This document shows positions 4,315 to 29,960 of a stretch of 41,940 nucleotides of DNA, in pieces; positions within the stretch are counted from its first letter, which is position 1, and each line of letters begins with the position of its first letter. Made by a program: the position numbers and the translations under genes. A model generated the notes under the pieces. That model was not told the DNA's origin. It made no database searches and saw only the letters and a program-made list of their open reading frames with translations. The stretch is taken from sequence record LR756500.1, one strand, 5' to 3'.

Positions 4315-6001
4315 ATTTTAATGAACCACTATCATATATTCTATAAATTTTTCTAGACATCATTATTTCATGTTCTGTCATATTAGAATCATAACCTTCT
4401 TTAACTAATACATCTTTCCTATAATTAAATCTATGTTTTTTAATTCCATCTACTACATACCAATAATTTGGAGGTGTATTATTTATAAAATTGAATCCTA
4501 ATTTATAATAAAGATTTCCTTTACTCCAACTCCTATCAGCATAACTAATTATTCTTATTGGATTATATTCTTTAATAAAATGTTTAAATAAGCGATCAGC
4601 ACCACCAATAACATTAGTATTTAAAATTGTACAGAATCTAAGTAATTCATACTCATTTTCAATTGAAATTTGTCCTAGTGCTTTTCTTAATACACTAAAT
4701 GTCATTAAACTAACTAATTCATTATTATAATATAGCCCATATTTTATTTTAGATGGAGTATATCCTTGTATGTGATTTTTTTCTAAGAAATCTTTTTCTT
4801 CTTTTGTATTAATTTCTTTTATATCACATTTTCTAGCATATATTTTATTATCAGATAAATTTAATATATTTTTTATTCTAGATTTAATTATATCTTTTTT
4901 ATAATACCAATCATCTTCATATATATGTATTAATTTTATATTATTATTTTCAGCTAATTCTGTTTTTTCTAAATGATAATCTTTATCCTTTTGGAGTTCA
5001 TTATGCCAATAAATTCCATTAAATTCAAATCCTATTTTTAAATCAGGTAAATATATATCTATTTCTTTACCATTTAAAAATATTCTTCTATTTAATTCTA
5101 ATGTATTATCATATATTTCACTTATAAATAATTTTAAACTATTTTCAGGTTTTGATAAATTTAATTGATTACAATTTGTGCATGTTTCCTCTTTATTATA
5201 TCTATATCTAAATAAATCTCTACTTATTTTATATGATTTTTTACAATTGTTGCACATAATAGTGAAAAAATCTCTTTCAATAAGAAGTATTTGTTTATCT
5301 GGATATGTTTTTATTATATTTTCTTTTCTTGTTTGTAGTATTTTATATTTAATATTTTCAACTTTATTTGGATTATCTTCTCCATATAGTTCTATCATTG
5401 TATTTTTAAATACATCTTTAACTATTTCCGATTGCCATGGATGATTAGTTCCATAACGTTCTTGGGATGTTTTTTTATATGACTCTTTCCAACTATCTAT
5501 ATTTTCTTTGAATGATTCTATTCTTTTTTCTTGTATCTCCTTTAATTGGGCTACATTTTCTACACCATAACGTTCTAAATTAGTATTCTTTAACTTATTT
5601 TGAATATCTTGTTTTTCTTCTTCGGATTTATTTAATTTAGTATTACTTAATTTATCTTTTATATTCTGTAATTTATTTGGATTATCAACTCCATAACGGT
5701 TTAGACTAGTTTTACGTCTAGATTCTTTCATTTTTTCCTTTAACTCTGGATCATTAACCATACATTCTTTTGAACAGTATCCTGTATATCCAATATCTAA
5801 ATTTTTAAAATTAGAATCTTTATTATTACATACTTTACACTTGGGAACTTCTTTTATTTTATATATGTAGTGCCATATTTTTTGTAAAAAACTGATATCT
5901 AAATCTAAATAACCATTTATCAATTCATACTTAATTGGATAATTTTTCTTTACACTGCGTTCTTGTAATAAATTTCCTTTTAATTCTATAATATTTTCCA
6001 T
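4295..6001 (-). CDS. Hef-like putative homing endonuclease, copy 3 (most divergent, fully visible)
   Basis: RYG repeats, EIDIYLPDLKIGFEFNGIYWH, NHIQG, YELLRFC, ISYADRSWSKGNLYYKLGF. Confidence 0.85.
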   Translation of the reverse strand: MENIIELKGNLLQERSVKKNYPIKYELINGYLDLDISFLQKIWHYIYKIKEVPKCKVCNNKDSNFKNLDIGYTGYCSKECMVNDPELKEKMKESRRKTSLNRYGVDNPNKLQNIKDKLSNTKLNKSEEEKQDIQNKLKNTNLERYGVENVAQLKEIQEKRIESFKENIDSWKESYKKTSQERYGTNHPWQSEIVKDVFKNTMIELYGEDNPNKVENIKYKILQTRKENIIKTYPDKQILLIERDFFTIMCNNCKKSYKISRDLFRYRYNKEETCTNCNQLNLSKPENSLKLFISEIYDNTLELNRRIFLNGKEIDIYLPDLKIGFEFNGIYWHNELQKDKDYHLEKTELAENNNIKLIHIYEDDWYYKKDIIKSRIKNILNLSDNKIYARKCDIKEINTKEEKDFLEKNHIQGYTPSKIKYGLYYNNELVSLMTFSVLRKALGQISIENEYELLRFCTILNTNVIGGADRLFKHFIKEYNPIRIISYADRSWSKGNLYYKLGFNFINNTPPNYWYVVDGIKKHRFNYRKDVLVKEGYDSNMTEHEIMMSRKIYRIYDSGSLKFEWKNE

Positions 6002-9330: not shown

Positions 9331-11178
9331 TTAATTTGTATTAATGTAATTAAATTTTAAATTACCTGTTCCAAAACATCTATAATATCCTTTATCATGC
9401 ATTATCTCCACTTCAGTCATTGATGGATCCGCTCCTTCTTTAACCAATTTATCCTTTCTGAACTTAAACCTATTTTCTCTTATGCCATCTACTACCCACC
9501 AATAACTAAGCTCTGAATGCCCTATATATTTAAAACCTAATTTTATATACAAATTATCTTGCTCATTTGATGTCCAATCACAATCAGTATAACTAATTAC
9601 TTGTTCTGGTTTGTATTCCTTTGTAAAATAATTAAACAAACGACTTGCACCTCCTGTAACAGATATATTCAATTTATTAGCAAACCTTAAAAGTTCATAT
9701 TCTCCTTCAACTGCCTTTTGTCCTAAATTCTTTCTTAATGATCCTAACGTCATTAATGATACTAATTCATTNNNNNNNNNNNNNNNNNNNNNAACAGCAG
9801 CATTAACATTACCTTGCAAATGGTTCCTATTTAAAAACTCTCGACTATCACTAGAGGACACCTCTTTAATTATACACTTTCTAGCATATATAGTTTCATT
9901 TAAATTTAATAGCCCTTTTATTCTTGACTTAATAATATCTTTTTTATAATTCCAATCATCTTCCCAAATATGCACCAACTTAACTCCTTTAGATTTAGCT
10001 AATAATGTTTTATTTAAATGATATTTATCATCTTTATATAATTCGGAATGCCAATAGACACCATCTACTTCAAATCCTACTTTATAATCTTCTATATAAA
10101 TATCTATTTCATTATCATTTAAAATGGTTCGATCTTTTTTTGTTTCTATATTTAAACTTTCTATAAATTCTCTAATTTCATTTTCTATTTTACTTTCAAA
10201 AGAATTTGAATAATATAAAGGTTCACAATTTAAACATGTATTTTTATTTATTAATGATCTTTTATGAAGTAAATAGCTTGTTATAGTATATTCTTTATTA
10301 CATTTATCGCATGTTATAGTAACATTTAAATTATTATCAATATTAATAATATTTAGAGTATTAAATTTATTTAAAATATCATTTTTATATTTATTTTTTA
10401 ATTTTGATTTATAAAAATTAGATTGAGTTATAAATTCAGTTNNNNNNNNNNNNNNNNNNNNNNCTTTTGATTTTTCTTTTATTTGTTCTGATTGTAATAC
10501 ATGATTAGTACCATATTTTTCTAAGCATGTTAATTCTCTTTTTTCTAAACTTTCTTTTGTTACATTATGAAACTGATTATATCTTTTAAAATTAGTTTCT
10601 TTTATTTTTTGTTTAATTTCATTATTTCTAAATACATTATCACTTCCATATTTTTCAGTTAAAGTTTTTATAGATTTTTGTTTAATTTTTATATTATCAA
10701 AAACATATTCAACTCCATAANNNNNNNNNNNNNNNNNNNNNNNNNNNNNNCTTATCTTTTTAACAGATAATATTTCTTCATTACCATATTTTTCTAAACA
10801 TGTTGATTTTCTTTTTTCTATTGCTAATTTACTTTGACTTGGATTTATTGTTCCATATCTTTCTAATGAAGTTTTTCTAATTTTATTTATAGATAATTGT
10901 TTTGAACATTCATTTGAACATGATGTATAACCAATAGAAATAGATCTAAATTTTTTTAAATTATTTTTACATATTTCACATATAGGTATTTCACATATAT
11001 CATTTAAATATAAATAAAGAATTTCTTTAAATTGTATTTTAGTAAAATTATATTTTGTAATAAAAATATTTAAATCATTTAAAATTTCTGGTTCAAATTT
11101 TTCGAACCATTTTTTATTCATTCTAGTTGATAAAAAACGATTATTTATTTTTATTATATGCAGTAATTTATTTTTCAT
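9331..11178 (-). CDS. Hef-like putative homing endonuclease, copy 4
   Basis: CEICK..CSNEC, multiple KYG repeats, FEVDGVYWH, NHLQG, YELLRFA, ISYTD..LYIKLGF. Confidence 0.85.
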   Translation of the reverse strand: MKNKLLHIIKINNRFLSTRMNKKWFEKFEPEILNDLNIFITKYNFTKIQFKEILYLYLNDICEIPICEICKNNLKKFRSISIGYTSCSNECSKQLSINKIRKTSLERYGTINPSQSKLAIEKRKSTCLEKYGNEEILSVKKIXXXXXXXXXXXYGVEYVFDNIKIKQKSIKTLTEKYGSDNVFRNNEIKQKIKETNFKRYNQFHNVTKESLEKRELTCLEKYGTNHVLQSEQIKEKSKXXXXXXXXTEFITQSNFYKSKLKNKYKNDILNKFNTLNIINIDNNLNVTITCDKCNKEYTITSYLLHKRSLINKNTCLNCEPLYYSNSFESKIENEIREFIESLNIETKKDRTILNDNEIDIYIEDYKVGFEVDGVYWHSELYKDDKYHLNKTLLAKSKGVKLVHIWEDDWNYKKDIIKSRIKGLLNLNETIYARKCIIKEVSSSDSREFLNRNHLQGNVNAAVXXXXXXXNELVSLMTLGSLRKNLGQKAVEGEYELLRFANKLNISVTGGASRLFNYFTKEYKPEQVISYTDCDWTSNEQDNLYIKLGFKYIGHSELSYWWVVDGIRENRFKFRKDKLVKEGADPSMTEVEIMHDKGYYRCFGTGNLKFNYINTN

Positions 11179-11271: not shown

Positions 11272-12084
11272 TTAAATTTTAAAATATTTATCTTTTATTT
11301 TAAATGATAAATTATATTCATGCATAAAGTTTTCTTCACCTATATTTTTTATAGTATCTTCTTTCCATTTTTCATTTCTTTGTGGATGATCATACCAATA
11401 AACTTTTTTAACTTTAAATATTTCAGAATCTTGTACAAATTTATAAAATAAATCAAAATGAATATCTGAAGACATAATAATTATTCTAGAATTATTAATT
11501 GAAGCATATAATGGTACTATTTCTTTTATTAAAATTTTTTTATTATTATCAGACATGTTAGAAATATTATCAATTATAAAAATATCATAAAGTTTACCTT
11601 TATAATTATTACTATTTACTAATTGTATACTTGAATTATTATCGAATTCTATTACTTCTGATGTGCTTTTTATAATACCTGGTTTCAAATACATAGGTAA
11701 TTTAGAATAAAAAATTTTAAATTTATTAAATAATTCTCTACCAATTTCATGTTTAATTGAAAATAAAGCTATTTTTTTTTGTTCAAATACTGCAAAATAT
11801 AAAGATAATAATGTATTTAACATTGAAATTCCCATTTGTCTAGAACTTAATAATATTGAAAATCTATTTTCATTCCAAAATTTTAAAATATCTTTTTGAT
11901 ATTCATATAAATTAATATCCAATTTTGATATAAAATATTCAATATCTTTTCTACATTTATAATATTCATCTAATTCATCATAATCTAAAACATATTTAAA
12001 TTTACTATTTTTACTATTAGGTATATTTCTATAACAATATTCATTGCTATTTATACTATTTTTATTTATATAATTCATAACCAT
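11272..12084 (-). CDS. Terminase large-subunit ATPase-domain paralogue with degenerate motifs
   Basis: YKCRKDIEYF, LYEYQ (Q motif), SRQMGIS (Walker A without Lys), FIIDNIS (Walker B DE>DN), YSKLPMYLKPG, VYWYDHPQR; no nuclease domain. Confidence 0.8.
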   Translation of the reverse strand: MVMNYINKNSINSNEYCYRNIPNSKNSKFKYVLDYDELDEYYKCRKDIEYFISKLDINLYEYQKDILKFWNENRFSILLSSRQMGISMLNTLLSLYFAVFEQKKIALFSIKHEIGRELFNKFKIFYSKLPMYLKPGIIKSTSEVIEFDNNSSIQLVNSNNYKGKLYDIFIIDNISNMSDNNKKILIKEIVPLYASINNSRIIIMSSDIHFDLFYKFVQDSEIFKVKKVYWYDHPQRNEKWKEDTIKNIGEENFMHEYNLSFKIKDKYFKI

Positions 12085-12175: not shown

Positions 12176-14062
12176 TTAAATAATATCATAAATATCGAAA
12201 AATAAACTACCATCTTCTCCTTTAGATCCCTTATTTAATTCTTTATCAACTAAATCTTGAATATCTTTTTCTATTATTTCATATAATTCTTCTGCAAAAT
12301 CTGAGAAATCCATAGTAGAAAAGAATTCATTACTGGTTATGCAAGACATTATTAAATCATCGTGTCCCTTCATTCCAGCATAGGATCCAGCTGGAGTTTT
12401 TCCAAATTGTTTAGCTTCTTCTATTGTATTAAATTCAAATAATTGTATTCTATTTTCTCTAATTGATTTTTTAAATTTTTGACATATTATAGGTTTATTA
12501 TCAGTTTTAATTCTTAATCCAAAACTAGGAGTCTTTGCGTCATTTCTATGTTTAAATTTTACTATCATTTCTTCATCAAATTCATTTCTAGATGGAAAAA
12601 TAGTTTGTAAATTTTTAATTAATTCACCACCAAAAGTATTCCATTCTATTATTATTTTTATATTTTCTGCATAAAAAATATCAAAAATTAAAGTATATAA
12701 TATTTTAGCATATTGTTCAGGAGAATGTTCATTACTTCTAAATACTCCTATTTGTTTTAAAGCAAAAAAGTCCATAAAAGAGCCAGGCTGTTTTAGATGT
12801 TTAAACATATCTTTATCTAATAATTCTAGTTTAAAGATATTTATTACAGCATGATCTCCAAAATTACCAGCAGATAAATCACAACTAAATAACCAATAAT
12901 TTTCTTCATTACCTATTTCATCAATATCAAATTTTGGATGCCATTTCAAAAATATTTCATAAGGTATTTCTAAATCTTCTAATTCATCAAATTGATGTGA
13001 TATAAATTCTACTTTTGCATTTTCTAATTTTTTAAGTTCTCCTGGACCTAAAAGTAAATTATCTCCTGATATAAATTGATTACCATATTGTCTATTAAAT
13101 GCATCTTCACCACCTAAATTAGAAATTTCTTTTCTCATCCATTCATTATCTCTTCCTGGAACCTCCCACCAATCAACTCTAAAATCTTTAAATTCATTTT
13201 GTTTTCTAACAGCTCCATCATAAATATCATGAAACTTATTAAATCCATTTGGTGTACTAGTAATAATAATTCTAGATATTTGTGAAGACGATAATGTAGG
13301 AAATACATTTTCATAAAAACTATGTACAAAATTAGGATGTATGTGAGCAAACTCATCTAAAAATAAAAGGTGAATAGTAAAACCTATACCTGCTTTTTTA
13401 GTAGTAGATTGAGCAACAATCCTACAGCCATTATCAAATTTTAAATTAAATACATCATTTTTTAATAATCCTGGTTTCATAAAAAATGGTAAATTATCTA
13501 ATATAACTTTTGCTTTATCTACAATTTCTCTCGTCGTGGCACCTTTATTCGATAAAATTAAACAATTCTTATCAAAATTAAATAATACGTACCATGCTAT
13601 ATAAATTGACGAACATATTGTTTGACTTGAAAGTATACCATTAGTATATAATCTATGATTTGGATGATTTACTGTAACATCAAACATACCTATTTTATTG
13701 TTACTTTTTGATATACTAATAATTTTTTCTAAACCATCGACTGTTATTATTTCCGTATTTAATTCAAGTTTATCGAAAGATATTTTATTATAATTTTTAT
13801 CATAAACTTTATGTAAATCAGCGCCTTCTAAAATTTTACCTGACTCTGTTATTATTGTCCATACTTTATAAGGTTGAGTATTATGAAGATATTGTAATTC
13901 TTCATATCCAGTATCAGTTAAAACTTGTATATATGATAACTTAATAGATTTAATTATTTTTTTAGATATATTATTTTCATCTAAATCTAAATTTCTATAC
14001 TGTATTTTTTCTATTAATTCTATTAAGTATAAAATTATTTTTTTTAATATTTTTTTTATCAT
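12176..14062 (-). CDS. terL: Terminase large subunit, C-terminal part, preceded by split-intein IntC (aa 1-147)
   Basis: Intein blocks EGADLH, MFDVTV..HRLYTNGILSSQ|T, then TICSSIYIAW, Walker B LFLDEFAH, STPNG, nuclease motifs CDLSAG..GD and HDDLIM. Confidence 0.92.
   Translation of the reverse strand: MIKKILKKIILYLIELIEKIQYRNLDLDENNISKKIIKSIKLSYIQVLTDTGYEELQYLHNTQPYKVWTIITESGKILEGADLHKVYDKNYNKISFDKLELNTEIITVDGLEKIISISKSNNKIGMFDVTVNHPNHRLYTNGILSSQTICSSIYIAWYVLFNFDKNCLILSNKGATTREIVDKAKVILDNLPFFMKPGLLKNDVFNLKFDNGCRIVAQSTTKKAGIGFTIHLLFLDEFAHIHPNFVHSFYENVFPTLSSSQISRIIITSTPNGFNKFHDIYDGAVRKQNEFKDFRVDWWEVPGRDNEWMRKEISNLGGEDAFNRQYGNQFISGDNLLLGPGELKKLENAKVEFISHQFDELEDLEIPYEIFLKWHPKFDIDEIGNEENYWLFSCDLSAGNFGDHAVINIFKLELLDKDMFKHLKQPGSFMDFFALKQIGVFRSNEHSPEQYAKILYTLIFDIFYAENIKIIIEWNTFGGELIKNLQTIFPSRNEFDEEMIVKFKHRNDAKTPSFGLRIKTDNKPIICQKFKKSIRENRIQLFEFNTIEEAKQFGKTPAGSYAGMKGHDDLIMSCITSNEFFSTMDFSDFAEELYEIIEKDIQDLVDKELNKGSKGEDGSLFFDIYDII
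13622..14062 (-). mobile_element. Split intein C-fragment (147 aa, atypically long, ends Ser-Gln; +1 Thr)
   Basis: Block B-, F- and G-like motifs; junction codons TCA AGT CAA|ACA. Confidence 0.8.
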
Positions 14063-15162
14063 TATTTATTTTTATTTTCTATAAATTCTAAGCAATTATT
14101 TATTACTAAATCAGGATCTTTATAATATTCTAATTCATTTACATGATATACTTCATATCCTGATCTTAATATTGCATCATCTCTATCTTTTTCTCTTTTA
14201 TTATTTTCGGGATTATTTTTATGATAATATACACCATCAAATTCTATAATTTTATTTATATCTTTTATAAAAAAATCTGGTAAAATTATTCTATTACATA
14301 ATCTTAATCTATATTCTGAATTAGTACCATCATCTAAAATAATTTTATTTTTATTTAAAGTTGCAAAATATATCTCATTATATTTATCTTTTATAATTTC
14401 ATATAAAGAAATAAAAAGTTTCTGTGATACTTTAGAATAACTACTTACTTTAAAATTATTACTCCATCTATTTATTTTTAAATTCCATTTTTCTATACCT
14501 ATTTCTTCTCCATATTTATTTATAAAAAAATTTAAATCTCTACACTGAATTTTAGAAATAATATTTTTTGCTTCTTCTAAAGAAAAACCTCTTCGTATCC
14601 AATATTCTTTATGTATAGGCATAACTCTATTTTTCATAAAATACTTATAATTATCTTTTTTCATAATAAAATATTCTTCATCTGTTAAATTAGGATATCT
14701 CTTTTTATAAAACTCAATAGAAAATGGACTAGTCTCTTTACGTTTTTGCTCAGTAGTTTTACTTTTAGACATAATGTTTCCTTCACCTTTCATTCTATCA
14801 GAAATCCATTTTCTCCATTTATCTTCTTTCATATGTTTACCTCCATTTATAGTTGTTGCCGCTTTATCACTAGGTATACATAATAATGCATCTACACCAA
14901 AATCTTTTCTATAATCACTATTATTTTTATCGGGATGAAATCTTTTGAAATGACCACTATATATTCTTTTAACAGCCATTCCACAATATTTACATATAAC
15001 ATAATCTGTATTTTCTATACTGTTTAATTTTAATTTTTCCGATTCTTTATAAGCACCATAAATACCTTTACATTTATTTGAACAAAATTTAGCACTTATA
15101 GTAGAAGAGTTAAATTCATTTTTACAATGAATGCATTTTATTTTTCTAATTATATTTGACAT
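14062..15162 (-). CDS. Free-standing Vsr/DUF559-like endonuclease between the terL halves
   Basis: Zn motifs CIHC..FCSNKC and CKYC..HFKRFH, KYGEE repeat, LPDFF..IIEFDGVYYH; own TATAAATA promoter; TAATG overlap with TerL-C. Confidence 0.85.
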   Translation of the reverse strand: MSNIIRKIKCIHCKNEFNSSTISAKFCSNKCKGIYGAYKESEKLKLNSIENTDYVICKYCGMAVKRIYSGHFKRFHPDKNNSDYRKDFGVDALLCIPSDKAATTINGGKHMKEDKWRKWISDRMKGEGNIMSKSKTTEQKRKETSPFSIEFYKKRYPNLTDEEYFIMKKDNYKYFMKNRVMPIHKEYWIRRGFSLEEAKNIISKIQCRDLNFFINKYGEEIGIEKWNLKINRWSNNFKVSSYSKVSQKLFISLYEIIKDKYNEIYFATLNKNKIILDDGTNSEYRLRLCNRIILPDFFIKDINKIIEFDGVYYHKNNPENNKREKDRDDAILRSGYEVYHVNELEYYKDPDLVINNCLEFIENKNK

Positions 15163-15166
15163 TTTT

Positions 15167-15178
15167 TATTTATATATT
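15167..15178 (-). promoter_or_regulatory. AATATATAAATA, endonuclease/TerL-C
   Basis: Directly upstream of ATG 15162. Confidence 0.7.
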
Positions 15179-15188
15179 AGATATAGTA

Positions 15189-15764
15189 CTAGCTTCTTGA
15201 TAGATAAGAATATGTTTTATATAAATAATATTTAATTTTATCTAAAAAAGATAATGTTTTATTTGTTTTAGATATAACATAATATAATTCAAATATAGGA
15301 AGTGTATAAGTATTATCTTTATTTTTAAATTTACTTAAACTATTAATTAAAGTAATATCATTTAACTTTATAGTAATTAATATATTATGGAAAAAACATT
15401 TCCCCGTTTGTCTCGCCGCGAGGCAGATACTGAAGCGATTATCAACAAAATGTCTAAGCATTTTTTCTTGATAATCTCTTAATACAATTGTTCTAAGACC
15501 TTCATCGGTCATTACTGTACAATACTTATTAGCAAAATATACTATATCTTTAGCACATTTTCTTATTTCACTTATTTCAAAATCTGTATAATCAAATATT
15601 ATGTTACCTTTTCTTATTGTTGGATTGCCTTCATAAAAGGGAGTTGATTTGGGTTTATAACCTTCATCAATCATATTCATTAATTCATTGATTTTTTCGG
15701 TACTCCATGCTGTTCTTTCTTGCACATTATCTTCTTTATGTGCTAGCGCGTATTCTTCTTCCAT
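15189..15764 (-). CDS. terL: Terminase large subunit, N-terminal part (aa 1-122) + split-intein IntN (aa 123-191)
   Basis: KCAKDIVYFANKYC, LRDYQ, Walker A AARQTGK directly followed by Cys1 (CFFHNILI..LPIFELY). Confidence 0.92.
   Translation of the reverse strand: MEEEYALAHKEDNVQERTAWSTEKINELMNMIDEGYKPKSTPFYEGNPTIRKGNIIFDYTDFEISEIRKCAKDIVYFANKYCTVMTDEGLRTIVLRDYQEKMLRHFVDNRFSICLAARQTGKCFFHNILITIKLNDITLINSLSKFKNKDNTYTLPIFELYYVISKTNKTLSFLDKIKYYLYKTYSYLSRS
15192..15398 (-). mobile_element. Split intein N-fragment of terL (69 aa)
   Basis: Cys after GK; block A-like; no block B, which is in the other half. Confidence 0.75.
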
Positions 15765-24623: not shown

Positions 24624-25826
24624 TTAAAATAATGAATTATCACTAATAATATCTTTAATATCAAAATTATCTTCTTCATCATCCTTAAAGAAATTAAATT
24701 GAGACGGAACAAATACATTATTAACATGTTCAGTATCTTTTAATATAGATTCTTTTGTTACAAAATTATTAATATCTTGTTGTAATTTTGAAAATACTTC
24801 TATATCTTTAAACATTTGTTGTTGAATTTGTTGTGGTATAGCTCTACTATGTAGCATAATTAACATAGTATTATTTTCAATATTATTTAAAATATCTTGA
24901 TAAGTCATTTTAGTTGCATTAAGTTCATGTATTATTATTTTAGCAACTTCTTCTCTATATGATTTATCAAATAAATAAATACTTTTAAAATCTTTATGTT
25001 TTTCAGTTAATACATCCCATACTCTATCAGCTTTTTTATCACTAACTCCGTATCTTCTTCCATTTTTTTCATACCAATATACAGATTTTATATTATCACC
25101 AGCATCACCACTTAATATTTTTTTAAATATAAATTCATTAGAATTAACTGTAATTGTTTGTAATTGATGTTTTTTAACTAAATCTTTAAGTAAAGTTTTT
25201 GTTATATTATCTCCATGAATAGTTTGATTCATTTCAAATATATTTGTAATTTCGTTACTTATATCAGATTTAAGCCAATCTATAAATCCAGGATATCCAA
25301 CTATTTTTTTACTCATTCTATTTTTGGTATAAAATATAGTATGAGCTTTAGTTGATTCATTATAATCAACTAATTGCATTAAATCTCCGTCACCTGAAAC
25401 TATTATAACATTATCTCCCTCTAAATTCAAAGCTTTAGACCAAGCAAAAACTAAATCATCACCTTCAGCACCAGGAACTCTGTGTATAATCATTCCCTTA
25501 TTTTTTAATATAGTTGAAAATTCATCTATACAATTATAGAAACTAGACCAATCGATATTATCTGATGGAACTCTATTTCCTTTATATGCTTGTTCAGGAT
25601 AAAAATCCTTTCTCCATGACGATGAATCAATTACAAAAACTATCCTTTTAAGAATAGGTTTAAACCTTCTAATTTCAGCTGCGAAATCTAATGCTAACTT
25701 ACCAATAAAAGTACTTTGATCATTTTTAGATTCTAATAATTTTCCTTTACTTTCATTAGGCAGAACATAAAGCGTCTTATGAAAAAAATAGTTGCCATCG
25801 AAAATAATTGTATGTTTTTTACTCAT
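24624..25826 (-). CDS. rnh: RNase H / 5'-3' exonuclease (T4 rnh-like)
   Basis: IIFDGN, SWRKDFYP..YKGNR, EGDD, SGDGDLMQL, GDAGDNI. Confidence 0.92.
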   Translation of the reverse strand: MSKKHTIIFDGNYFFHKTLYVLPNESKGKLLESKNDQSTFIGKLALDFAAEIRRFKPILKRIVFVIDSSSWRKDFYPEQAYKGNRVPSDNIDWSSFYNCIDEFSTILKNKGMIIHRVPGAEGDDLVFAWSKALNLEGDNVIIVSGDGDLMQLVDYNESTKAHTIFYTKNRMSKKIVGYPGFIDWLKSDISNEITNIFEMNQTIHGDNITKTLLKDLVKKHQLQTITVNSNEFIFKKILSGDAGDNIKSVYWYEKNGRRYGVSDKKADRVWDVLTEKHKDFKSIYLFDKSYREEVAKIIIHELNATKMTYQDILNNIENNTMLIMLHSRAIPQQIQQQMFKDIEVFSKLQQDINNFVTKESILKDTEHVNNVFVPSQFNFFKDDEEDNFDIKDIISDNSLF

Positions 25827-26043
25827 TAGTATATTTTATTAATAGTACTTTATTTTCTTTTAAGATATTAGTACCATTTTGTATATAGATTTTTTCTTTA
25901 TTTTCATCTATTACAGCTAGTTTTATAGAAGTAATATCTATTTCAGTATAACCTATAATTCCATGTTCATCATTAATTATTTCATATGCTAATCCTTGAG
26001 TAGCTATATTTTTTAATTTTTCTTTTGATAATTTTATTTCCAT
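25819..26043 (-). CDS. Small hypothetical protein
   Basis: 74 aa, overlaps rnh start, promoter-like motif at 26068-26076. Confidence 0.6.
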   Translation of the reverse strand: MEIKLSKEKLKNIATQGLAYEIINDEHGIIGYTEIDITSIKLAVIDENKEKIYIQNGTNILKENKVLLIKYTNE

Positions 26044-26075
26044 TTTATTTAAATTTAATAATTTAGTTTATATAT

Positions 26076-26837
26076 TTATACATTATTAACTACGTTTTGA
26101 ATCTCATAAATCGCGGCCAATAGTGAAATCTGTGGATCAATTACCTGTTGACGAGTAGATTGATATTTATTTACAGTTATAATAATTTGTGGAAGATATT
26201 TTAATTTATCAGGTTTTTCTTGTTGTAAATATTCAATAAATTCTGTACCTAAAGATGCTAATACATCATCAACTCTATTAGAATAATTAGAAACTAAATA
26301 TTGATAATTTTTAACAGGATCTATATTATCGAAAATTAATTGAAATATATCTTTATAAACGCTATTAAATTTTTTAATATCATCTATTGATATTTTTTCT
26401 TTACCTTCATTTTTATATCCTTGTAAAGTATTTAGCATACTTCTAAAGTCAGGAAATTTTCTTTTAACTAATTCTAATAATGCTTCTTTATCTATAATTA
26501 AATTTTCAGCTTTACATATATTCCACAATCTAATTAAATAACCTTTCATTAATTCAGATTCTTCTTCTTTAGAAAAATCAAAATTAATTAATTCAAATCT
26601 AGATTTAACTGCTTCATCTATTTTATTAATATAATTACTAGTAGCAATAAATCTAGAATTAGCATGAAATTCTTCCATAGATGCTTTAAATGCTTTAAAA
26701 AATTGCTGTGAAGCACCATCACAATTATGAGTACATATTCCATTTTCTGTTAAAAATGTATGATTTTTATATACTGTTAAATTTAAAACTCTTCCTTTAT
26801 CTATTTTTTTAATTTGTTTTATTTTAAATGTTTTCAT
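26076..26837 (-). CDS. Clamp loader (gp44/RFC-like) C-terminal part, preceded by split-intein IntC (aa 1-38)
   Basis: MKTFKIKQIKK..NLTV..NHTFLTENGICTHN|CDGAS, then RFIATSN..KIDEAVKSRF, FPDFRS. Confidence 0.92.
   Translation of the reverse strand: MKTFKIKQIKKIDKGRVLNLTVYKNHTFLTENGICTHNCDGASQQFFKAFKASMEEFHANSRFIATSNYINKIDEAVKSRFELINFDFSKEEESELMKGYLIRLWNICKAENLIIDKEALLELVKRKFPDFRSMLNTLQGYKNEGKEKISIDDIKKFNSVYKDIFQLIFDNIDPVKNYQYLVSNYSNRVDDVLASLGTEFIEYLQQEKPDKLKYLPQIIITVNKYQSTRQQVIDPQISLLAAIYEIQNVVNNV
26724..26837 (-). mobile_element. Split intein C-fragment (38 aa, His-Asn end, +1 Cys)
   Basis: Canonical block F/G, Lys-rich. Confidence 0.9.
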
Positions 26838-28155
26838 TTATTAAAAAATTTTTGATTTTATTATTTACTTTTTCTGGAATTTTAAAATTATTTTTTTTAA
26901 CAATATTATCGAAATGTATATATGTATAATTTTTAAAAAAAAATTCATCAATTCTTTTATATGTAAAAAAATTTAAGTTACACCAATAAATTAAACTTTC
27001 TTCTTTTAAAATATTAATATCTTTATTCATATAAATTGATGGTTTTATTTCATATACAACTTTATTTTTATAATCTATAAAATCTATTATATAAATTTTT
27101 TCAATATTATTATAAGTATAAGGTATTCTTAAATCTTCATATTTTAAATCTAAATTTTCATTTAAAATAAAAAAACATAATTCCCAAGAACTTCTAAATT
27201 TATACTCAATATTATTGTGTCTTAAATAAATATCTAATTTTGTCCAATAATTATTAATATTAGGTTTAAATCTATTTTCTGATATAGCCTTCTTAAGAGC
27301 AATACTTTGTTTTTTCCTTCTTTCATCGGTAACATAAAATTTAAAATTTTTATGATAACATTTTAATGAACAGGTATATTGTGATTTTGTTTTTCCTTTT
27401 CCAAATAATTGTTTATATTCATATTCTTTATCACATATTTTACATATTTTAATATTTTCATGATAATATGTTTTTACAAAATCTAAAAATTTATCTTTAT
27501 ATAGTTTTTTATAAAAAAATCTTTTATTTCTTAAATTCTTTTTAATATAAAAACAAGTATCCTCACTTAAATAATAATCTTTTAAATCAATTTTCTTTTT
27601 ATTATAAAAATAATTTAATCTAAAATCATTAAACATATTAATGGGATTTTCAACTTTGTTTAATATGAAATTTTTATATAAAATATGTTTTACCTTTTTA
27701 ATATCTTTATATTCATTTAATAATTTATAACTTATTAAATTTAAATATGAATAATCATAAGGTTGAAAATTATCAATTATATGTTCATTTTTAAAAAAAT
27801 ATCTTTTATATTTTTGACAATAATCATCATTACATTTATAAATTCTTCTATTTTTTAAATCTTTAATCTTTATATTATTATTACATATTTTACATTTTAC
27901 AATCTTTTCATCATTTTTTTCCTTTTTTAATTTATTACGTTTTTTTGCACATTCTATTAAAAATGTTTTTTGACATTTTTCATTACAACATATTTCTTTA
28001 TATCCTGTAAAAAAACCTCTAAATTTTGCATTAGATCCACAATATTTACACTTAGGTATATTTATATTATTTTCTTTTAAATATGCTTCTTCAATAGAAG
28101 CATATTTAAATCTAAATTTATTAATTAAACTTCTATTATAACTACTATAACCCAT
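26824..28155 (-). CDS. Free-standing TnsA-like PD-(D/E)xK endonuclease between the clamp-loader halves
   Basis: Several CxxC Zn motifs, FRSSWE..IPY..YIIDFID..YEIKP; own TATAAATA promoter. Confidence 0.8.
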   Translation of the reverse strand: MGYSSYNRSLINKFRFKYASIEEAYLKENNINIPKCKYCGSNAKFRGFFTGYKEICCNEKCQKTFLIECAKKRNKLKKEKNDEKIVKCKICNNNIKIKDLKNRRIYKCNDDYCQKYKRYFFKNEHIIDNFQPYDYSYLNLISYKLLNEYKDIKKVKHILYKNFILNKVENPINMFNDFRLNYFYNKKKIDLKDYYLSEDTCFYIKKNLRNKRFFYKKLYKDKFLDFVKTYYHENIKICKICDKEYEYKQLFGKGKTKSQYTCSLKCYHKNFKFYVTDERRKKQSIALKKAISENRFKPNINNYWTKLDIYLRHNNIEYKFRSSWELCFFILNENLDLKYEDLRIPYTYNNIEKIYIIDFIDYKNKVVYEIKPSIYMNKDINILKEESLIYWCNLNFFTYKRIDEFFFKNYTYIHFDNIVKKNNFKIPEKVNNKIKNFLINENI

Positions 28156-28164
28156 TAATATTTT

Positions 28165-28176
28165 TATTTATATATC
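28165..28176 (-). promoter_or_regulatory. GATATATAAATA, TnsA-like endonuclease
   Basis: Upstream of ATG 28155. Confidence 0.7.
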
Positions 28177-28194
28177 CCATTATATTTTTAAATG

Positions 28195-28821
28195 TTATAA
28201 AAAACATATTATATTATCCGTCAAACTTAGTCCATTTTTTATAGATTTTTCCATAATTTTACTATCCTTTGTGAGAATCATAAAGGGATGATTCTCAGTA
28301 ACATTGATAGTTTTTCCATCTTCTAATTCTATTTCATATAAATCATCAATTTTATCAGAAATTATTTCACATGTATCATTTTCTAATTTTCCAGTTTCAG
28401 TATTCATAGAAATACAATCATATATAGTATTTTTTTCTAAATTTTTTAATTTTATAGATTTCCAATTATTAAGTTTACCTATTCTTACCTTTTCATCTTC
28501 TTGTAAACATTCGTCTAGAATAACAACTTTAAGTTTTCCAGGTTCATCCATTATTGATCTAGTAGAACAAAAATCTGTTATTTTTTCTCTAACAACATCT
28601 ACTGATGTTTCTTTAGATGAATTAATATAAATATATGGATATCCAAATTCTTTAACAATAGCTTTAGCAACAGAAGTTTTACCTAAACCCGGACTTCCAT
28701 AAAATAAATAATTTTGAAGTTGACCAGATTTGAATTTTTCCTTTAAAAAATTTGGAACTACTATGTCATCTATTTTTGTTGGACGATATTTTTCTGTCCA
28801 TAATATTTCAGATATCTTCAT
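28195..28821 (-). CDS. Clamp loader (gp44/RFC-like) N-terminal part (aa 1-104) + split-intein IntN (aa 105-208)
   Basis: LWTEKYRP, Walker A GSPGLGKT, Walker B VILDE|C, intein block B VTENHPF. Confidence 0.92.
   Translation of the reverse strand: MKISEILWTEKYRPTKIDDIVVPNFLKEKFKSGQLQNYLFYGSPGLGKTSVAKAIVKEFGYPYIYINSSKETSVDVVREKITDFCSTRSIMDEPGKLKVVILDECLQEDEKVRIGKLNNWKSIKLKNLEKNTIYDCISMNTETGKLENDTCEIISDKIDDLYEIELEDGKTINVTENHPFMILTKDSKIMEKSIKNGLSLTDNIICFL
28198..28509 (-). mobile_element. Split intein N-fragment of clamp loader (104 aa)
   Basis: CLQEDEKV block A, LYEIELEDGKTINVTENHPF block B. Confidence 0.9.
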
Positions 28822-29199
28822 TTATTCAGGTATAAAGCTTCTTAATAAAAAAATGTTATTTGACATTGAATATGTATAAACATAGACTTCTTTTTGATTT
28901 TTTAAATATTCAATCATTTCATCTAAATCTTTAAATTGATTAGATTGACAAATATAATTTCTAATTGTATTATCTTTTTGTTTAAATTGTGCTACAGGCT
29001 GTTCAACTATTTTAACATTATATAATCTTGAAATTGTATCTGCAATATAATCTAATAAATCAAAATTTACATTATTAGAATTAATTAAAGACATACTATA
29101 TAATAGAAATCTTTTTCTTTCAACAGTATATAGTTGTTCATTTGTATATTTTACTTTTTGATGATATAAAACATCATCTATTATTTCATTTTGTAACAT
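28822..29199 (-). CDS. Hypothetical protein
   Basis: 125 aa, stop abuts clamp-loader ATG. Confidence 0.65.
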   Translation of the reverse strand: MLQNEIIDDVLYHQKVKYTNEQLYTVERKRFLLYSMSLINSNNVNFDLLDYIADTISRLYNVKIVEQPVAQFKQKDNTIRNYICQSNQFKDLDEMIEYLKNQKEVYVYTYSMSNNIFLLRSFIPE

Positions 29200-29261
29200 T
29201 TATTTGAATTTTAAATTATTAATATTAATATAATTATATGCAAAAATAATTTTTTGTTTCA

Positions 29262-29960
29262 CTATTTATCTAGTATTTCTAAAGCCTCTTTAGTTCTATC
29301 CATCCCGTCTTTTAGTTTTTCAAGTGATTCTGTTATATCTTGACCTTTAGTTATTTTGTATTTATAATTAACTGCTCTAACATAATCAGAAGCTTTAACA
29401 TCGCATTCTTCTTCAACTTTTCCACCTTTATCTAATTTAATTTGATCGGCTAAAGCACAAATAGTTGCTTGTTTATCACATGCTCTATCTAGTAAAGCTT
29501 TTAATATATCTTTAGGTTCAGTAGGCAAATCATAATCAAAAAGAGCTTTCCAATTATCTTCTACCATTTTTTTTCTTTTTTTATCTAATTGCCAATCTAT
29601 GTCTTCTAGAAGAAATTCTCCATGATAATCACGATCATCATTCACGGGTACAATTCGTAAACCTCTGTCCCTTAAATAAATATTTAAATCTAAATCATAA
29701 CCTACGAAACTTAATAACAAGTATGCATCTGCAATATGATCTGCTAATATTTTTGCTCTAGGCGGGGTATTTTCATTAGGCCATCCTCCTAAATAATATT
29801 TGATATCTTTTGCATATCTAAATTCTTTAGGATCTCTATTAAAAAATCCTTTATAAATTCTACTAAGAGTAGATAACTCTTTATTATGATCTTCATTAAT
29901 TTCATATCTAATTAAACTACCATCTTCAATTTCTTTTTCGTAAACTTTTTCGTTTTTCAT
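29262..29960 (-). CDS. Hypothetical protein; C-terminal half faintly like T4 DsbA/GapR-type dsDNA-binding helices
   Basis: ORF is solid; resemblance (LLDRACDKQATI..ADQIK..EEECDV..YVRAVNYKYK) is weak and by eye only. Confidence 0.5.
   Translation of the reverse strand: MKNEKVYEKEIEDGSLIRYEINEDHNKELSTLSRIYKGFFNRDPKEFRYAKDIKYYLGGWPNENTPPRAKILADHIADAYLLLSFVGYDLDLNIYLRDRGLRIVPVNDDRDYHGEFLLEDIDWQLDKKRKKMVEDNWKALFDYDLPTEPKDILKALLDRACDKQATICALADQIKLDKGGKVEEECDVKASDYVRAVNYKYKITKGQDITESLEKLKDGMDRTKEALEILDK

What the first reader, a model, noticed from the sequence alone, without database searches (positions are those of the whole stretch)
26076..28821. Second fractured gene: clamp loader split at Walker B with a conventional split intein and a TnsA-like nuclease in between
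Seen: ..VILDE|CLQ..TENHPF (104-aa IntN) and 38-aa basic IntC ..CTHN|CDGAS; spliced product is 319 aa, matching a gp44/RFC-size subunit. The intervening gene is PD-(D/E)xK TnsA-like, a different family from the Vsr-like one in terL. Inference: two independent fracture events, and the two intein pairs must be mutually orthogonal in one cell, which is useful for protein engineering.
Basis: partly seen in the sequence, partly recalled or inferred. Interest (0 to 1): 0.72.

Follow-up and report, generated by a model that had tools for sequence, protein, structure and literature searches.

The report
Phage clamp-loader gene fractured by split intein
A huge groundwater phage encodes its DNA-polymerase clamp loader as two half-genes that carry the halves of a self-splicing protein element, with a TnsA-like nuclease gene between them: a new example of the known "fractured gene" layout, and relatives show every stage from unbroken to broken.

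Summary
Three co-directional minus-strand ORFs encode:
- clamp-loader residues 1-104 plus a 104-aa IntN (28195-28821)
- a 443-aa nuclease (26824-28155)
- a 38-aa basic IntC plus clamp-loader residues 105-319 (26076-26837)

The break falls exactly after the Walker B Asp-Glu. The joined 319-aa product aligns end to end with intact phage clamp loaders.

- Curated intein N- and C-terminal models pass their cut-offs.
- A complex model pairs IntN with IntC (0.82 against 0.02 for the best control).
- The nuclease's best structural match is Tn7 TnsA (Z 9.1), and 42 of 61 aligned homologues hit the Pfam TnsA-like model.
- It shows no significant BLASTP similarity to the Vsr-like gene in the terL fracture.

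- The same intein at the same site also occurs as a contiguous mini-intein, and as a two-piece form with IntN fused in frame to the nuclease. Dozens of close relatives have no intein.
- The phage genome holds at least four candidate fractured genes: terL, clamp loader, PolB and NrdJ-like RNR.

This is a new member of a kind described in 2009. Splicing, nuclease activity and orthogonality remain untested.

The parts
28510..28821 (-). N-extein: clamp-loader residues 1-104, with the P-loop GSPGLGKTS and Walker B ...VVILDE at its C-terminal end.
   Evidence: PHROG 168 profile positions 7-117, E 5.9e-32. Pfam AAA positions 1-65. RFC small subunit PRK00440 positions 2-112. Alignment to intact homologues.
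28198..28509 (-). IntN: 104 aa, starting at Cys1 (CLQEDE...). Block B TENH lies at ORF residues 175-178. Net charge -6. The TAA stop is at 28195-28197.
   Evidence: TIGR01445 intein_Nterm matches residues 105-182, 30.9 bits against a cut-off of 24.5. Pfam Intein_splicing 34.4 bits, just under its 35.8 cut-off. It is 53-67% identical to 19 other clusters of mostly ~205-aa N halves. Charge.
28156..28194 (-). 39-nt spacer. The N half and the nuclease ORF are in the same reading frame, separated by three TAA codons (the N-half stop and two in the spacer): ...NIICFL*HLKI*WDI*IKILMGYSS...
   Evidence: In relatives such as L052 (P0102) and P0185 the corresponding stretch is an open in-frame linker that fuses IntN to the nuclease.
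27376..28155 (-). Nuclease gene, N-terminal ~260 aa. It has three Cys4 zinc-ribbon-like modules (Cys 36/39/56-57/61, 88/91/108/113, 238/241/262/266) and helical segments, and is presumed to bind DNA.
   Evidence: AF2 model with mean pLDDT 92.8. Cys positions. C36 and C39 are nearly invariant in the 61-sequence alignment. Weak zf-BED hit, E 0.0099.
26824..27375 (-). Nuclease gene, C-terminal part. The restriction-endonuclease-fold (TnsA-like) domain spans residues ~283-426 (26878-27309), with E325, D358, E369 and K371. The last 14 nt overlap the start of the C half.
   Evidence: Foldseek top hits TnsA 1t0f and 1f1z, probability 1.00. VIA-align Z 9.1 and 8.9, against Vsr 7.6 and I-Bth0305I 7.2. 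PF08722 hits 42 of 61 homologues. PHROG 15427 'endonuclease', E 4.2e-26. Conserved residues. dN/dS 0.34 against L053.
26724..26837 (-). IntC: 38 aa, MKTFKIKQ...NGICTHN, net charge +6. Block F reads VLNLTV (Asn where Npu DnaE has Asp). Block G is HN.
   Evidence: TIGR01443 intein_Cterm matches residues 19-39, 24.7 bits against a cut-off of 15.6. Alignment to the Npu DnaE and Pab PolII inteins. Complex model with IntN 0.82 against a best control of 0.02.
26076..26723 (-). C-extein: Cys+1 (CDGAS...) and clamp-loader residues 105-319, covering sensor 1, the SRF arginine-finger region, the gp44 lid and the collar. The stop codon is included.
   Evidence: PHROG 168 profile positions 110-309, E 2.7e-34. 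Pfam Gp44_lid 46.4 bits against a cut-off of 27. Alignment.

Best explanation
This is a functional 'fractured gene'. The phage's gp44/RFC-type clamp-loader ATPase is made as two polypeptides. One is N-extein-IntN (208 aa) and the other is IntC-C-extein (253 aa).

Inferred mechanism:
- The acidic IntN and basic IntC associate into a class-1 HINT fold.
- They carry out protein trans-splicing using Cys1, block B Thr-x-x-His, the terminal His-Asn and Cys+1.
- This forms a peptide bond between Glu104 and Cys+1. It restores the Walker B region (...VVILDE-CDGAS...) of a 319-aa clamp loader.

The gene between the halves encodes a zinc-ribbon protein with a TnsA-like PD-(D/E)xK nuclease domain. Its most likely role is that of a homing-type endonuclease. 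It would cut nuclease-free alleles in co-infecting relatives, either intein-free or carrying the contiguous mini-intein, and be copied in by recombinational repair.

Its position in the intein loop is what split a formerly cis-splicing mini-intein.

Shown here: the anatomy, the homologies, conservation of the splicing residues, purifying selection, the existence of all intermediate allele types, and a complex model that pairs the halves.

Inferred only: actual splicing, nuclease activity and target, and the direction of the evolutionary steps.
For: 1. Colinear, abutting halves and a gap-free junction against intact homologues.
2. Intein models pass their curated cut-offs exactly at the predicted boundaries.
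3. The same three-gene layout occurs in L004, L006, L007, L009 and L010, and with more distant nucleases in L051 and L055-L057. Cys1, TxxH, terminal Asn and Cys+1 are kept in every allele. The intein is 56-67% identical where exteins are only 23-62%.
4. dN/dS against the close variant L053 is 0.11 for the N half, 0.17 for the C half and 0.34 for the nuclease, at dS of 0.09-0.16.
5. The IMG/VR copy of the genome has no other strong gp44-type gene.
6. IntN plus IntC complex model scores 0.82, best of 3 controls 0.02. That mark was reached by 51 of 78 solved complexes and 2 of 108 mismatched pairs. Runs agree in at least 93% of contacts and partner pLDDT is 80.
7. Contiguous mini-intein alleles sit at the same site (P0192, P0195, P0200 and P0207 verified; about 23 clusters of 435-478 aa).
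8. Two-piece alleles have IntN fused in frame to the nuclease (P0102 and P0183-P0187, 669-679 aa; L052).
9. P0192 (no nuclease) and P0185 (with nuclease) are 95% identical over N-extein plus IntN.
10. The nuclease fold and family place it with TnsA.
11. Fractured alleles are not one clade on the extein tree; at least 2 changes are forced.
Against: - There is no experimental or proteomic evidence for splicing.
- No RNA run holds the locus, so RNA-level joining could not be tested with reads.
- Pfam Intein_splicing on the N half is 1.4 bits under its gathering score.
- Block F carries Asn, not Asp, in all alleles examined. L010 has Gln for the penultimate His.
- The window's nuclease does not itself hit PF08722. 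No sequence-level match to any PDB chain was found.
- The nuclease is kept at this locus at 31-43% identity, which is not typical of a purely selfish homing gene that decays after fixation.
- Incongruence between the nuclease and extein trees is not significant (AU p 0.10 and 0.07).
- The complex score may reflect the model's memory of solved split inteins.
Confidence: 0.78

Rival explanations
1. The intein halves no longer splice. They act only as high-affinity dimerisation domains that hold the two clamp-loader pieces together without a covalent bond. This would resemble phage Aeh1 NrdA, which is split by the mobE homing endonuclease gene and reassembles non-covalently.
For: A precedent exists for a phage gene split by a homing endonuclease gene that reassembles non-covalently (PMC3045599, listed). 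Block F has Asn instead of Asp in all alleles. L010 lacks the penultimate His.
Against: Cys1, block B Thr and His, the terminal Asn and Cys+1 are kept in all seven diverged alleles compared, and in the contiguous mini-intein alleles, which must splice in cis to give a working Walker B. A 142-residue insert left inside the Walker B region of an AAA+ ATPase would probably be incompatible with the ATP site.
Confidence: 0.06
2. The locus is a dead clamp-loader gene disrupted by a mobile nuclease insertion. Clamp loading is supplied by another phage gene or by the host.
For: Other AAA+ ORFs exist in the genome, including one of 338 aa that matches PHROG 168 weakly at E 9.8e-11.
Against: dN/dS is 0.11 and 0.17 on the halves. 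Both ORFs are intact, and the arrangement is conserved across alleles whose exteins are only 23-62% identical. No second strong gp44-type homologue is present.
Confidence: 0.03
3. The halves are joined at the RNA level, for example by a group I intron that carries the nuclease ORF, and not at the protein level.
For: Homing-endonuclease ORFs are often intron-borne in phage replication genes. No RNA data were available to exclude this directly.
Against: No Rfam family, including intron models, matches 25800-29300 at E up to 1. The 104 and 38 extra codons are protein-coding, match intein models at the exact boundaries, and are under purifying selection. Contiguous in-frame mini-intein alleles exist.
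Confidence: 0.02
4. Trans-splicing occurs, but the nuclease is not, or is no longer, a homing endonuclease. It has been domesticated for a phage function such as degrading host or competitor DNA, or excluding co-infecting relatives.
For: The nuclease persists at this locus at 31-43% identity with dN/dS of 0.34. The nuclease domain family has 772 representative clusters. The nuclease tree is not significantly incongruent with the extein tree.
Against: It sits exactly where homing endonuclease domains sit in inteins. Near-identical alleles differ by its presence or absence, and a truncated, apparently decaying copy exists (P0190). Some relatives carry NUMOD3, a DNA-binding motif of homing endonucleases. 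The fracture is patchy on the extein tree.
Confidence: 0.2

Closest known systems
Fractured genes with split inteins (Dassa et al. 2009, PMC2677866; source of the gp41-1, NrdJ-1 and IMPDH-1 split inteins)
   Same: A conserved DNA-metabolism gene of a phage is broken into two co-directional ORFs. Split-intein halves sit at the break and a free-standing endonuclease gene lies between them. The break is at the usual homing-endonuclease insertion loop. IntN of 104 aa and IntC of 38 aa fall inside their reported ranges of 88-105 and 33-54 aa.
   Different: The host protein, a gp44/RFC-type clamp loader, is not among their eight host types. Their endonucleases were GIY-YIG or Vsr-like, whereas this one is TnsA-like PD-(D/E)xK with zinc ribbons. 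The intein is only distantly related to gp41-1 (phmmer E 0.3). The charge polarity here is IntN acidic and IntC basic.
Cyanobacterial DnaX (Pol III gamma/tau) intein and archaeal RFC-S inteins (Novikova et al. 2016, PMC4760082)
   Same: These are inteins in orthologous clamp-loader AAA+ ATPases. The cyanobacterial one lies immediately after Walker B, the same functional motif as here.
   Different: They are in cellular genes, and that paper does not describe them as split or as carrying a gene between two halves. The paper reports four RFC-S insertion points, the commonest in the P-loop, none overlapping the cyanobacterial one. Relatedness of those inteins to this one was not tested.
Tn7 TnsA (PDB 1f1z, 1t0f)
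   Same: It is the best structural match of the nuclease domain: Z 9.1 and 8.9, with 126-142 aligned residues. Most homologues hit Pfam Tn7_TnsA-like_N. The catalytic-type acidic and Lys residues are conserved.
   Different: Sequence identity is only 11-14%. There is no Tn7 context and no transposition partner genes nearby. The N-terminal half is a zinc-ribbon region not covered by the TnsA match. The window protein does not hit PF08722 itself.
Phage Aeh1 nrdA split by the mobE homing endonuclease gene (Crona et al., PMC3045599)
   Same: A phage replication-related gene is split in two by a free-standing homing endonuclease gene and still yields a working enzyme (title and abstract).
   Different: By that paper's title and abstract, the pieces are assembled by protein interaction domains derived from a mobile genetic element. 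Here complete intein splicing motifs are present.
Vsr-like / EDxHD homing endonucleases (I-Bth0305I, PMC3239194)
   Same: They share the broad restriction-endonuclease-like fold (Z 7.2-7.6). They play the same genomic role in the other fractured genes of this phage.
   Different: The structural score is lower than for TnsA. The conserved residues differ (E...D...ExK here). BLASTP against the Vsr-like gene in the window's terL fracture is not significant (E 0.21).

Membership tests
Fractured gene (Dassa et al. 2009) | A conserved enzyme gene is broken into two co-directional ORFs that together are colinear with intact homologues. | tested here: met
   PHROG 168 positions 7-117 and 110-309. The 319-aa joined product aligns with the intact clamp loaders of Lak-A1 (324 aa), PAU gp76 and Campylobacter phage gp44.
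Fractured gene (Dassa et al. 2009) | Split-intein halves lie at the break. | tested here: met
   TIGR01445 and TIGR01443 pass their cut-offs at the exact boundaries. The halves are homologous to contiguous mini-inteins at the same site.
Fractured gene (Dassa et al. 2009) | A free-standing endonuclease gene lies between the halves. | tested here: met
   The 443-aa ORF has its own ATG and stop. It matches PHROG 15427 'endonuclease' and has a TnsA-like fold. Nuclease activity was not tested.
Fractured gene (Dassa et al. 2009) | The halves are joined by protein trans-splicing. | not testable with these tools
   The only support is a complex model, 0.82 against a best control of 0.02, and conservation of the catalytic residues.
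Class 1 intein (HINT domain) | Cys or Ser at position 1, block B Thr-x-x-His, terminal His-Asn, and a nucleophile at +1. | tested here: met
   C105, TENH at 175-178...THN at C-half residues 36-38, and Cys+1. These are kept in the other alleles, except that L010 has TQN.
Class 1 intein (HINT domain) | Asp in block F (the Asp of VYDIGV in Npu DnaE). | tested here: not met
   The window and all alleles examined have Asn (V-x-N-L-T-V). The Pab PolII intein also lacks Asp there in the alignment, so this residue is not universal.
Class 1 intein (HINT domain) | Pfam Intein_splicing (PF14890) above the gathering score. | tested here: inconclusive
   34.4 bits against 35.8 on the N half alone, which holds only part of the domain. 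On the IMG/VR copy, a six-frame search gave 36.6 bits, over the cut-off.
gp44 / RFC-type clamp-loader AAA+ ATPase | P-loop, Walker B hhhhDE, an Arg-finger SRx region and the gp44 lid domain. | tested here: met
   GSPGLGKTS, VVILDE and KSRF are visible in the sequence. Pfam AAA and Gp44_lid match, the lid at 46.4 bits against a cut-off of 27. RFC small subunit PRK00440 matches both halves colinearly but below its equivalog cut-off.
TnsA-like endonuclease (Pfam PF08722, PD-(D/E)xK) | Match to the family profile. | tested here: inconclusive
   The window protein has no hit, either whole or as the C-terminal domain alone. 42 of 61 aligned homologues hit PF08722, best E 2.3e-11.
TnsA-like endonuclease (Pfam PF08722, PD-(D/E)xK) | Restriction-endonuclease-like fold closest to the TnsA catalytic domain. 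| tested here: met
   AF2 model with pLDDT 92.8. Foldseek top hits 1t0f and 1f1z, probability 1.00. VIA-align Z 9.1 and 8.9 over model residues 283-426.
TnsA-like endonuclease (Pfam PF08722, PD-(D/E)xK) | Conserved acidic and Lys catalytic residues (E...D...ExK). | tested here: met
   D358 and E369 are invariant, and E325 and K371 are at least 90% conserved, across 61 homologues. Their spatial clustering in the model was not examined.
Tn7-type transposition system | TnsA acts with TnsB and TnsC, within transposon ends. | tested here: not met
   The neighbours are clamp-loader halves, a 5'-3' exonuclease and small ORFs. No transposase-type Pfam or PHROG hit appears in the flanking genes that were scanned.
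Vsr-like / EDxHD homing endonuclease | Similarity to Vsr / DUF559 / I-Bth0305I. | tested here: not met
   The window protein has no Pfam Vsr or DUF559 hit. The structural Z of 7.2-7.6 is below that for TnsA. BLASTP against the window's Vsr-like gene gives E 0.21.

The most novel reading that the evidence does not exclude
The zinc-ribbon TnsA-like proteins are a large, uncharacterised family of active homing endonucleases, with 772 representative clusters for the nuclease domain. They invade the loop of a resident mini-intein.

On this reading, the allele series found here records intein breaking as it happens: intein-free, contiguous mini-intein, IntN-nuclease fusion with a separate IntC, and three separate genes.

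One huge phage would then maintain at least four mutually orthogonal natural split inteins in its terminase, clamp loader, DNA polymerase and ribonucleotide reductase. That would make assembly of its replication and packaging enzymes depend on protein trans-splicing.
Probability: 0.4. Interest if true: 0.68.

Novelty: new member of a known kind. Interest (0 to 1): 0.55.

Why it matters
- It adds a new host protein and insertion site (phage gp44-type clamp loader, directly after the Walker B Asp-Glu) to the small set of natural fractured genes. It also adds a new endonuclease type to that set.
- It provides a new naturally split Cys1/Cys+1 intein. This intein is only distantly related to any solved intein (best phmmer E 0.004).
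- The same intein exists in nature as contiguous, two-piece and three-piece alleles, some on nearly identical exteins. The 2009 gene-breaking model can therefore be tested with matched natural sequences.
- A single genome with at least four candidate split-intein pairs is a ready-made candidate set for orthogonal protein ligation. The pairs differ in sequence, split site and charge polarity.

Tried and rejected
- Promoter and terminator scan of 25500-29500: 34 promoter-like sites against 44.7 expected, and no terminators. Uninformative in 22% GC DNA.
- Rfam search of 25800-29300 at E up to 1: nothing, so no support for an intron.
- Sequencing runs: only four groundwater DNA runs from one study and no RNA. 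Read laying was not used, and RNA-level joining could not be tested directly.
- PDB sequence searches. The nuclease profile gave only non-significant hits. IntN and IntC gave only weak hits to known inteins.
- Pfam and NCBIfam on the window's nuclease, whole or split into two parts: no family assignment.
- Horizontal transfer test. The extein tree supports window+L009 and L007+L010, and the nuclease tree does not recover these pairs. AU tests do not reject them (p 0.07 and 0.10), so transfer of the cassette is neither shown nor excluded.
- Search for a fully in-frame bifunctional intein of about 910 aa (N-extein, IntN, nuclease, IntC and C-extein in one ORF): none among the hits. Only the 8000 best candidates were scored.
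- DNA of the contig encoding P0185 (the nuclease-bearing twin of P0192) was withheld by the tool. I did not seek it by other means, so the insertion borders were not mapped at nucleotide level.
- The window's own assembly is not held for whole-genome search. The IMG/VR copy (G002, 429 kb, 100% identical at this locus) was used instead.
- Literature searches found no paper on a split intein in a phage clamp loader, or on TnsA-like nucleases as intein-associated homing endonucleases. The library is incomplete, so this is not proof of absence.
Full report
**Source and setting**

The window is very AT-rich, about 15-30% GC. Almost every gene is on the minus strand. Over both clamp-loader halves it is 100% identical to GenBank LR756500.1, an unannotated 462-kb 'uncultured phage'. 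An IMG/VR copy exists as a 429-kb contig, IMGVR_UViG_3300025030_000039, estimated 96% complete. The only sequencing runs that hold the locus are groundwater metagenomes.

Neighbouring genes are those of a myovirus: tail tube, tail sheath, terminase pieces and a 5'-3' exonuclease. Among minus-strand ORFs of at least 150 aa, stops are TAA (28) or TAG (2). Nothing calls for a non-standard genetic code.

**The observation**

- 28195-28821 encodes 208 aa. Residues 1-104 end in the Walker B strand ...KLKVVILDE. Residues 105-208 begin CLQEDE and include TENH at 175-178.
- 26824-28155 encodes 443 aa.
- 26076-26837 encodes 253 aa. Residues 1-38 (MKTFKIKQ...NGICTHN) precede CDGASQQFFK.

PHROG 168 (clamp loader of DNA polymerase) matches the first ORF at profile positions 7-117 (E 5.9e-32). 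It matches the third at positions 110-309 (E 2.7e-34). NCBIfam's RFC small-subunit model does the same, at positions 2-112 and 116-225. Pfam finds the gp44 lid domain in the C half.

NCBIfam intein_Nterm covers N-half residues 105-182, its full model length, at 30.9 bits against a cut-off of 24.5. Intein_Cterm covers C-half residues 19-39 at 24.7 bits against a cut-off of 15.6.

The 319-aa joined exteins align without a gap across the junction to three intact clamp loaders: Lak-A1 (324 aa...KVIVLEECDGLS...), Sphingomonas phage PAU gp76 and Campylobacter phage NCTC12673 gp44.

**Is it functional?**

The same three-gene layout recurs in diverged metagenomic phages: L004/L005, L006, L007, L009 and L010. 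It also occurs with more distant nucleases in L051 and in L055-L057, the last family being seen on at least 24 contigs.

Across seven alleles the exteins are 23-62% identical and the intein 56-67%. Cys1, block B Thr and His, the terminal Asn and Cys+1 are kept in all. The one exception is a penultimate His-to-Gln change in L010.

A close variant from another metagenome assembly (L053, groundwater) gave dN/dS of 0.11 for the N half, 0.17 for the C half and 0.34 for the nuclease, at dS of 0.09-0.16. The IMG/VR genome copy has no second strong gp44-type gene.

A complex model of IntN with IntC plus six extein residues scored 0.82. The best of 3 controls scored 0.02. That mark was reached by 51 of 78 solved complexes and 2 of 108 mismatched pairs. 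Runs agreed in at least 93% of contacts and the partner pLDDT was 80. Solved split inteins may inflate this score through model memory.

No Rfam family, including intron models, matches the region. Together these results favour protein trans-splicing, which restores the Walker B region. Splicing itself was not shown.

One deviation is that block F carries Asn where Npu DnaE has Asp, in every allele examined.

**The middle gene**

The window protein has no direct Pfam or NCBIfam assignment. Other evidence places it:
- It matches PHROG 15427 'endonuclease' (E 4.2e-26).
- An exhaustive search found 772 representative homologues, mostly to residues ~260-415.
- Of 61 aligned homologues, 42 hit Pfam Tn7_TnsA-like_N and 6 carry NUMOD3.
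- D358 and E369 are invariant. E325 and K371 are at least 90% conserved.
- An AlphaFold model built on that alignment has mean pLDDT 92.8.
- Its best PDB matches are TnsA: Foldseek probability 1.00, and VIA-align Z 9.1 and 8.9 over residues 283-426. Vsr scores Z 7.6 and I-Bth0305I Z 7.2.

The N-terminal ~260 residues contain three Cys4 zinc-ribbon-like modules and probably bind DNA.

Nothing nearby suggests a Tn7 context.

The gene between the terL pieces (14062-15162) gives weak DUF559 and MTES_1575 (Vsr-like) hits. It has no significant BLASTP similarity to the clamp-loader nuclease (E 0.21). They are therefore different families within the same broad fold class.

**The allele series**

The clamp-loader locus occurs in four states.
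- Intein-free. Thirty-three IMG/VR loci have exteins 58-66% identical to the window's. The 17 junctions read show ...ILDE|IDGVS..., where fractured alleles read ...DE|CDGAS.... Lak-A1 and the Campylobacter phage have a native Cys at that position.
- Contiguous mini-intein at the same site. There are about 23 clusters of 435-478 aa. P0192, P0195, P0200 and P0207 were checked by alignment. The window's IntN ends, and its IntC begins, where these proteins have a linker of roughly 5-12 residues.
- Two-piece form. N-extein, IntN and nuclease form one ORF of 669-679 aa (P0102 and P0183-P0187; locus L052), and IntC-C-extein is a separate overlapping ORF.
- Three-gene form, as in the window.

P0192 has a mini-intein and no nuclease. 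P0185 has IntN fused to the nuclease. They are 95% identical over the first 205 residues. P0190 is a version with a truncated nuclease.

In the window, the N half and the nuclease are in the same frame and are separated only by three TAA codons. This would fit descent from a fused form, but one in three arrangements would be in frame by chance.

No fully in-frame bifunctional intein was found.

On the extein tree the fractured alleles are not one clade. Intein-free Lak-A1 nests among them (99/97 support), and a 32-row intein-free clade sits beside the window. At least two changes are forced.

Congruence tests between nuclease and extein trees were inconclusive.

The series fits the gene-breaking model of Dassa et al., in which an endonuclease gene lands in the intein loop. 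The data cannot fix the direction of each step.

**More fractures in the same genome**

A Pfam intein search of the IMG/VR copy gave ten hits. Two regions outside the window were fetched.
- A family-B DNA polymerase is split at ...YIDTD|S... with ...VHN|SCY... in its C half. A 567-aa gene lies between.
- An NrdJ-like ribonucleotide reductase is split at ...AAPTG|CLEKD... with ...VSHN|TVS.... A 376-aa gene lies between.
- Both intervening genes contain an '(I/V)E(F/I)xGxYWH' motif. I read this as Vsr/DUF559-like from my own knowledge; it was not tested.

With terL and the clamp loader, that makes at least four candidate fractured genes.

Net charges of the intein halves:

| Pair | IntN | IntC |
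|---|---|---|
| Clamp loader | -6 | +6 |
| PolB | +6 | -10 |
| NrdJ | +1 | -11 |

The terL intein appears to be split near its N terminus, at 69 and 147 aa. Those boundaries were read by eye only. Identities between the clamp-loader halves and the others are 20-32%. These features make orthogonality plausible, but it is untested.

**Comparison with what is known**

Dassa et al. (PMC2677866) defined fractured genes in eight host types. The seven they name are gp41 helicase, IMPDH, DnaE, NrdA, NrdJ, DNA ligase and terminase. A further locus was in a protein of unknown function. Their endonucleases were GIY-YIG or Vsr-like. No clamp loader and no TnsA-like nuclease appear in that paper.

Novikova et al. 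(PMC4760082) describe inteins in cyanobacterial Pol III gamma immediately after Walker B, and in archaeal RFC-S at four other points.

Full-text searches found nothing on a split intein in a phage clamp loader, or on TnsA-like intein-associated endonucleases.

**Verdict**

This is a real and correctly read feature. It is a new member of a known kind, made more useful by the natural allele series and by the presence of several fractured genes in one genome.

Noticed in passing
window 12176-15764 (-): terL appears fractured at its Walker A. The N piece (15189-15764) ends ...AARQTGK followed by CFFHN.... A 366-aa gene with weak DUF559 / MTES_1575 hits lies at 14062-15162. The C piece (12176-14062) has ...VTVNHPNHRLYTNGILSSQ followed by TICSS.... 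If read correctly, the split is atypical (IntN ~69 aa, IntC ~147 aa) and the intein ends in Gln, not Asn. The boundaries were read by eye; no intein profile hit was obtained on these ORFs.
   Followed up: partly
L047 and L048 (IMG/VR copy G002, 50.5-55.5 kb and 58.5-63.0 kb; outside the window): Two more fractured genes in the same phage. One is a family-B DNA polymerase (Ser1/Ser+1 split intein, 567-aa intervening gene). The other is an NrdJ-like RNR (Cys1/Thr+1, 376-aa intervening gene). There is also a contiguous intein hit at G002 79402-80367 in a 577-aa frame, which was not inspected.
   Followed up: partly
window 93-1997, 2674-4314, 4295-6001, 9331-11178 (-): Four large paralogous ORFs (546-634 aa) match PHROG 3339 'homing endonuclease'. 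The one checked has DUF7487 plus weak Vsr-like hits. They are interleaved with tail tube, tail sheath and terminase genes, an unusual density of endonuclease-like genes.
   Followed up: no
window 11272-12084 (-): A 270-aa ORF resembles the terL ATPase domain (PHROG 5989, E 2.9e-29) but has ...SSRQMGIS... where the Walker A Lys is expected. It lies next to the fractured terL and may be a paralogue or a remnant.
   Followed up: no
L052 (2798-4828 and 4803/4809-5522) and proteins P0183-P0187, P0190: Two-piece clamp-loader alleles in which IntN is fused in frame to the TnsA-like nuclease. After splicing, the excised IntN would carry the nuclease as a C-terminal domain. P0190 is a copy with most of the zinc-ribbon region deleted.
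   Followed up: partly
L058 (1884-6241): A relative in which the intein-bearing clamp-loader N half is followed by three ORFs (119 aa, a 345-aa TnsA-like nuclease, and a 445-aa SSO2105_N protein). A 246-aa ORF that may be the C half comes after them. This would be a larger insertion between the halves.
   Followed up: no
L044 (4001-4920): An intein-free clamp-loader allele whose N-extein match is interrupted by roughly 600 nt between residues 36 and 37, just before the P-loop. This could be a different insertion, such as an intron or another element.
   Followed up: no
L010 (3232-3984 and 1897-3168): This fractured allele has Gln in place of the penultimate His of the intein (...GIGTQN|CDG). 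Its nuclease ORF is shorter (423 aa) and ends before the C half starts. This may be a decaying nuclease.
   Followed up: partly
window 28156-28197 (-): The N half and the nuclease ORF share a reading frame, interrupted only by three TAA codons. L009 is also in frame, while L006 and L007 are not and L004 overlaps by 1 nt, so this may be chance.
   Followed up: partly
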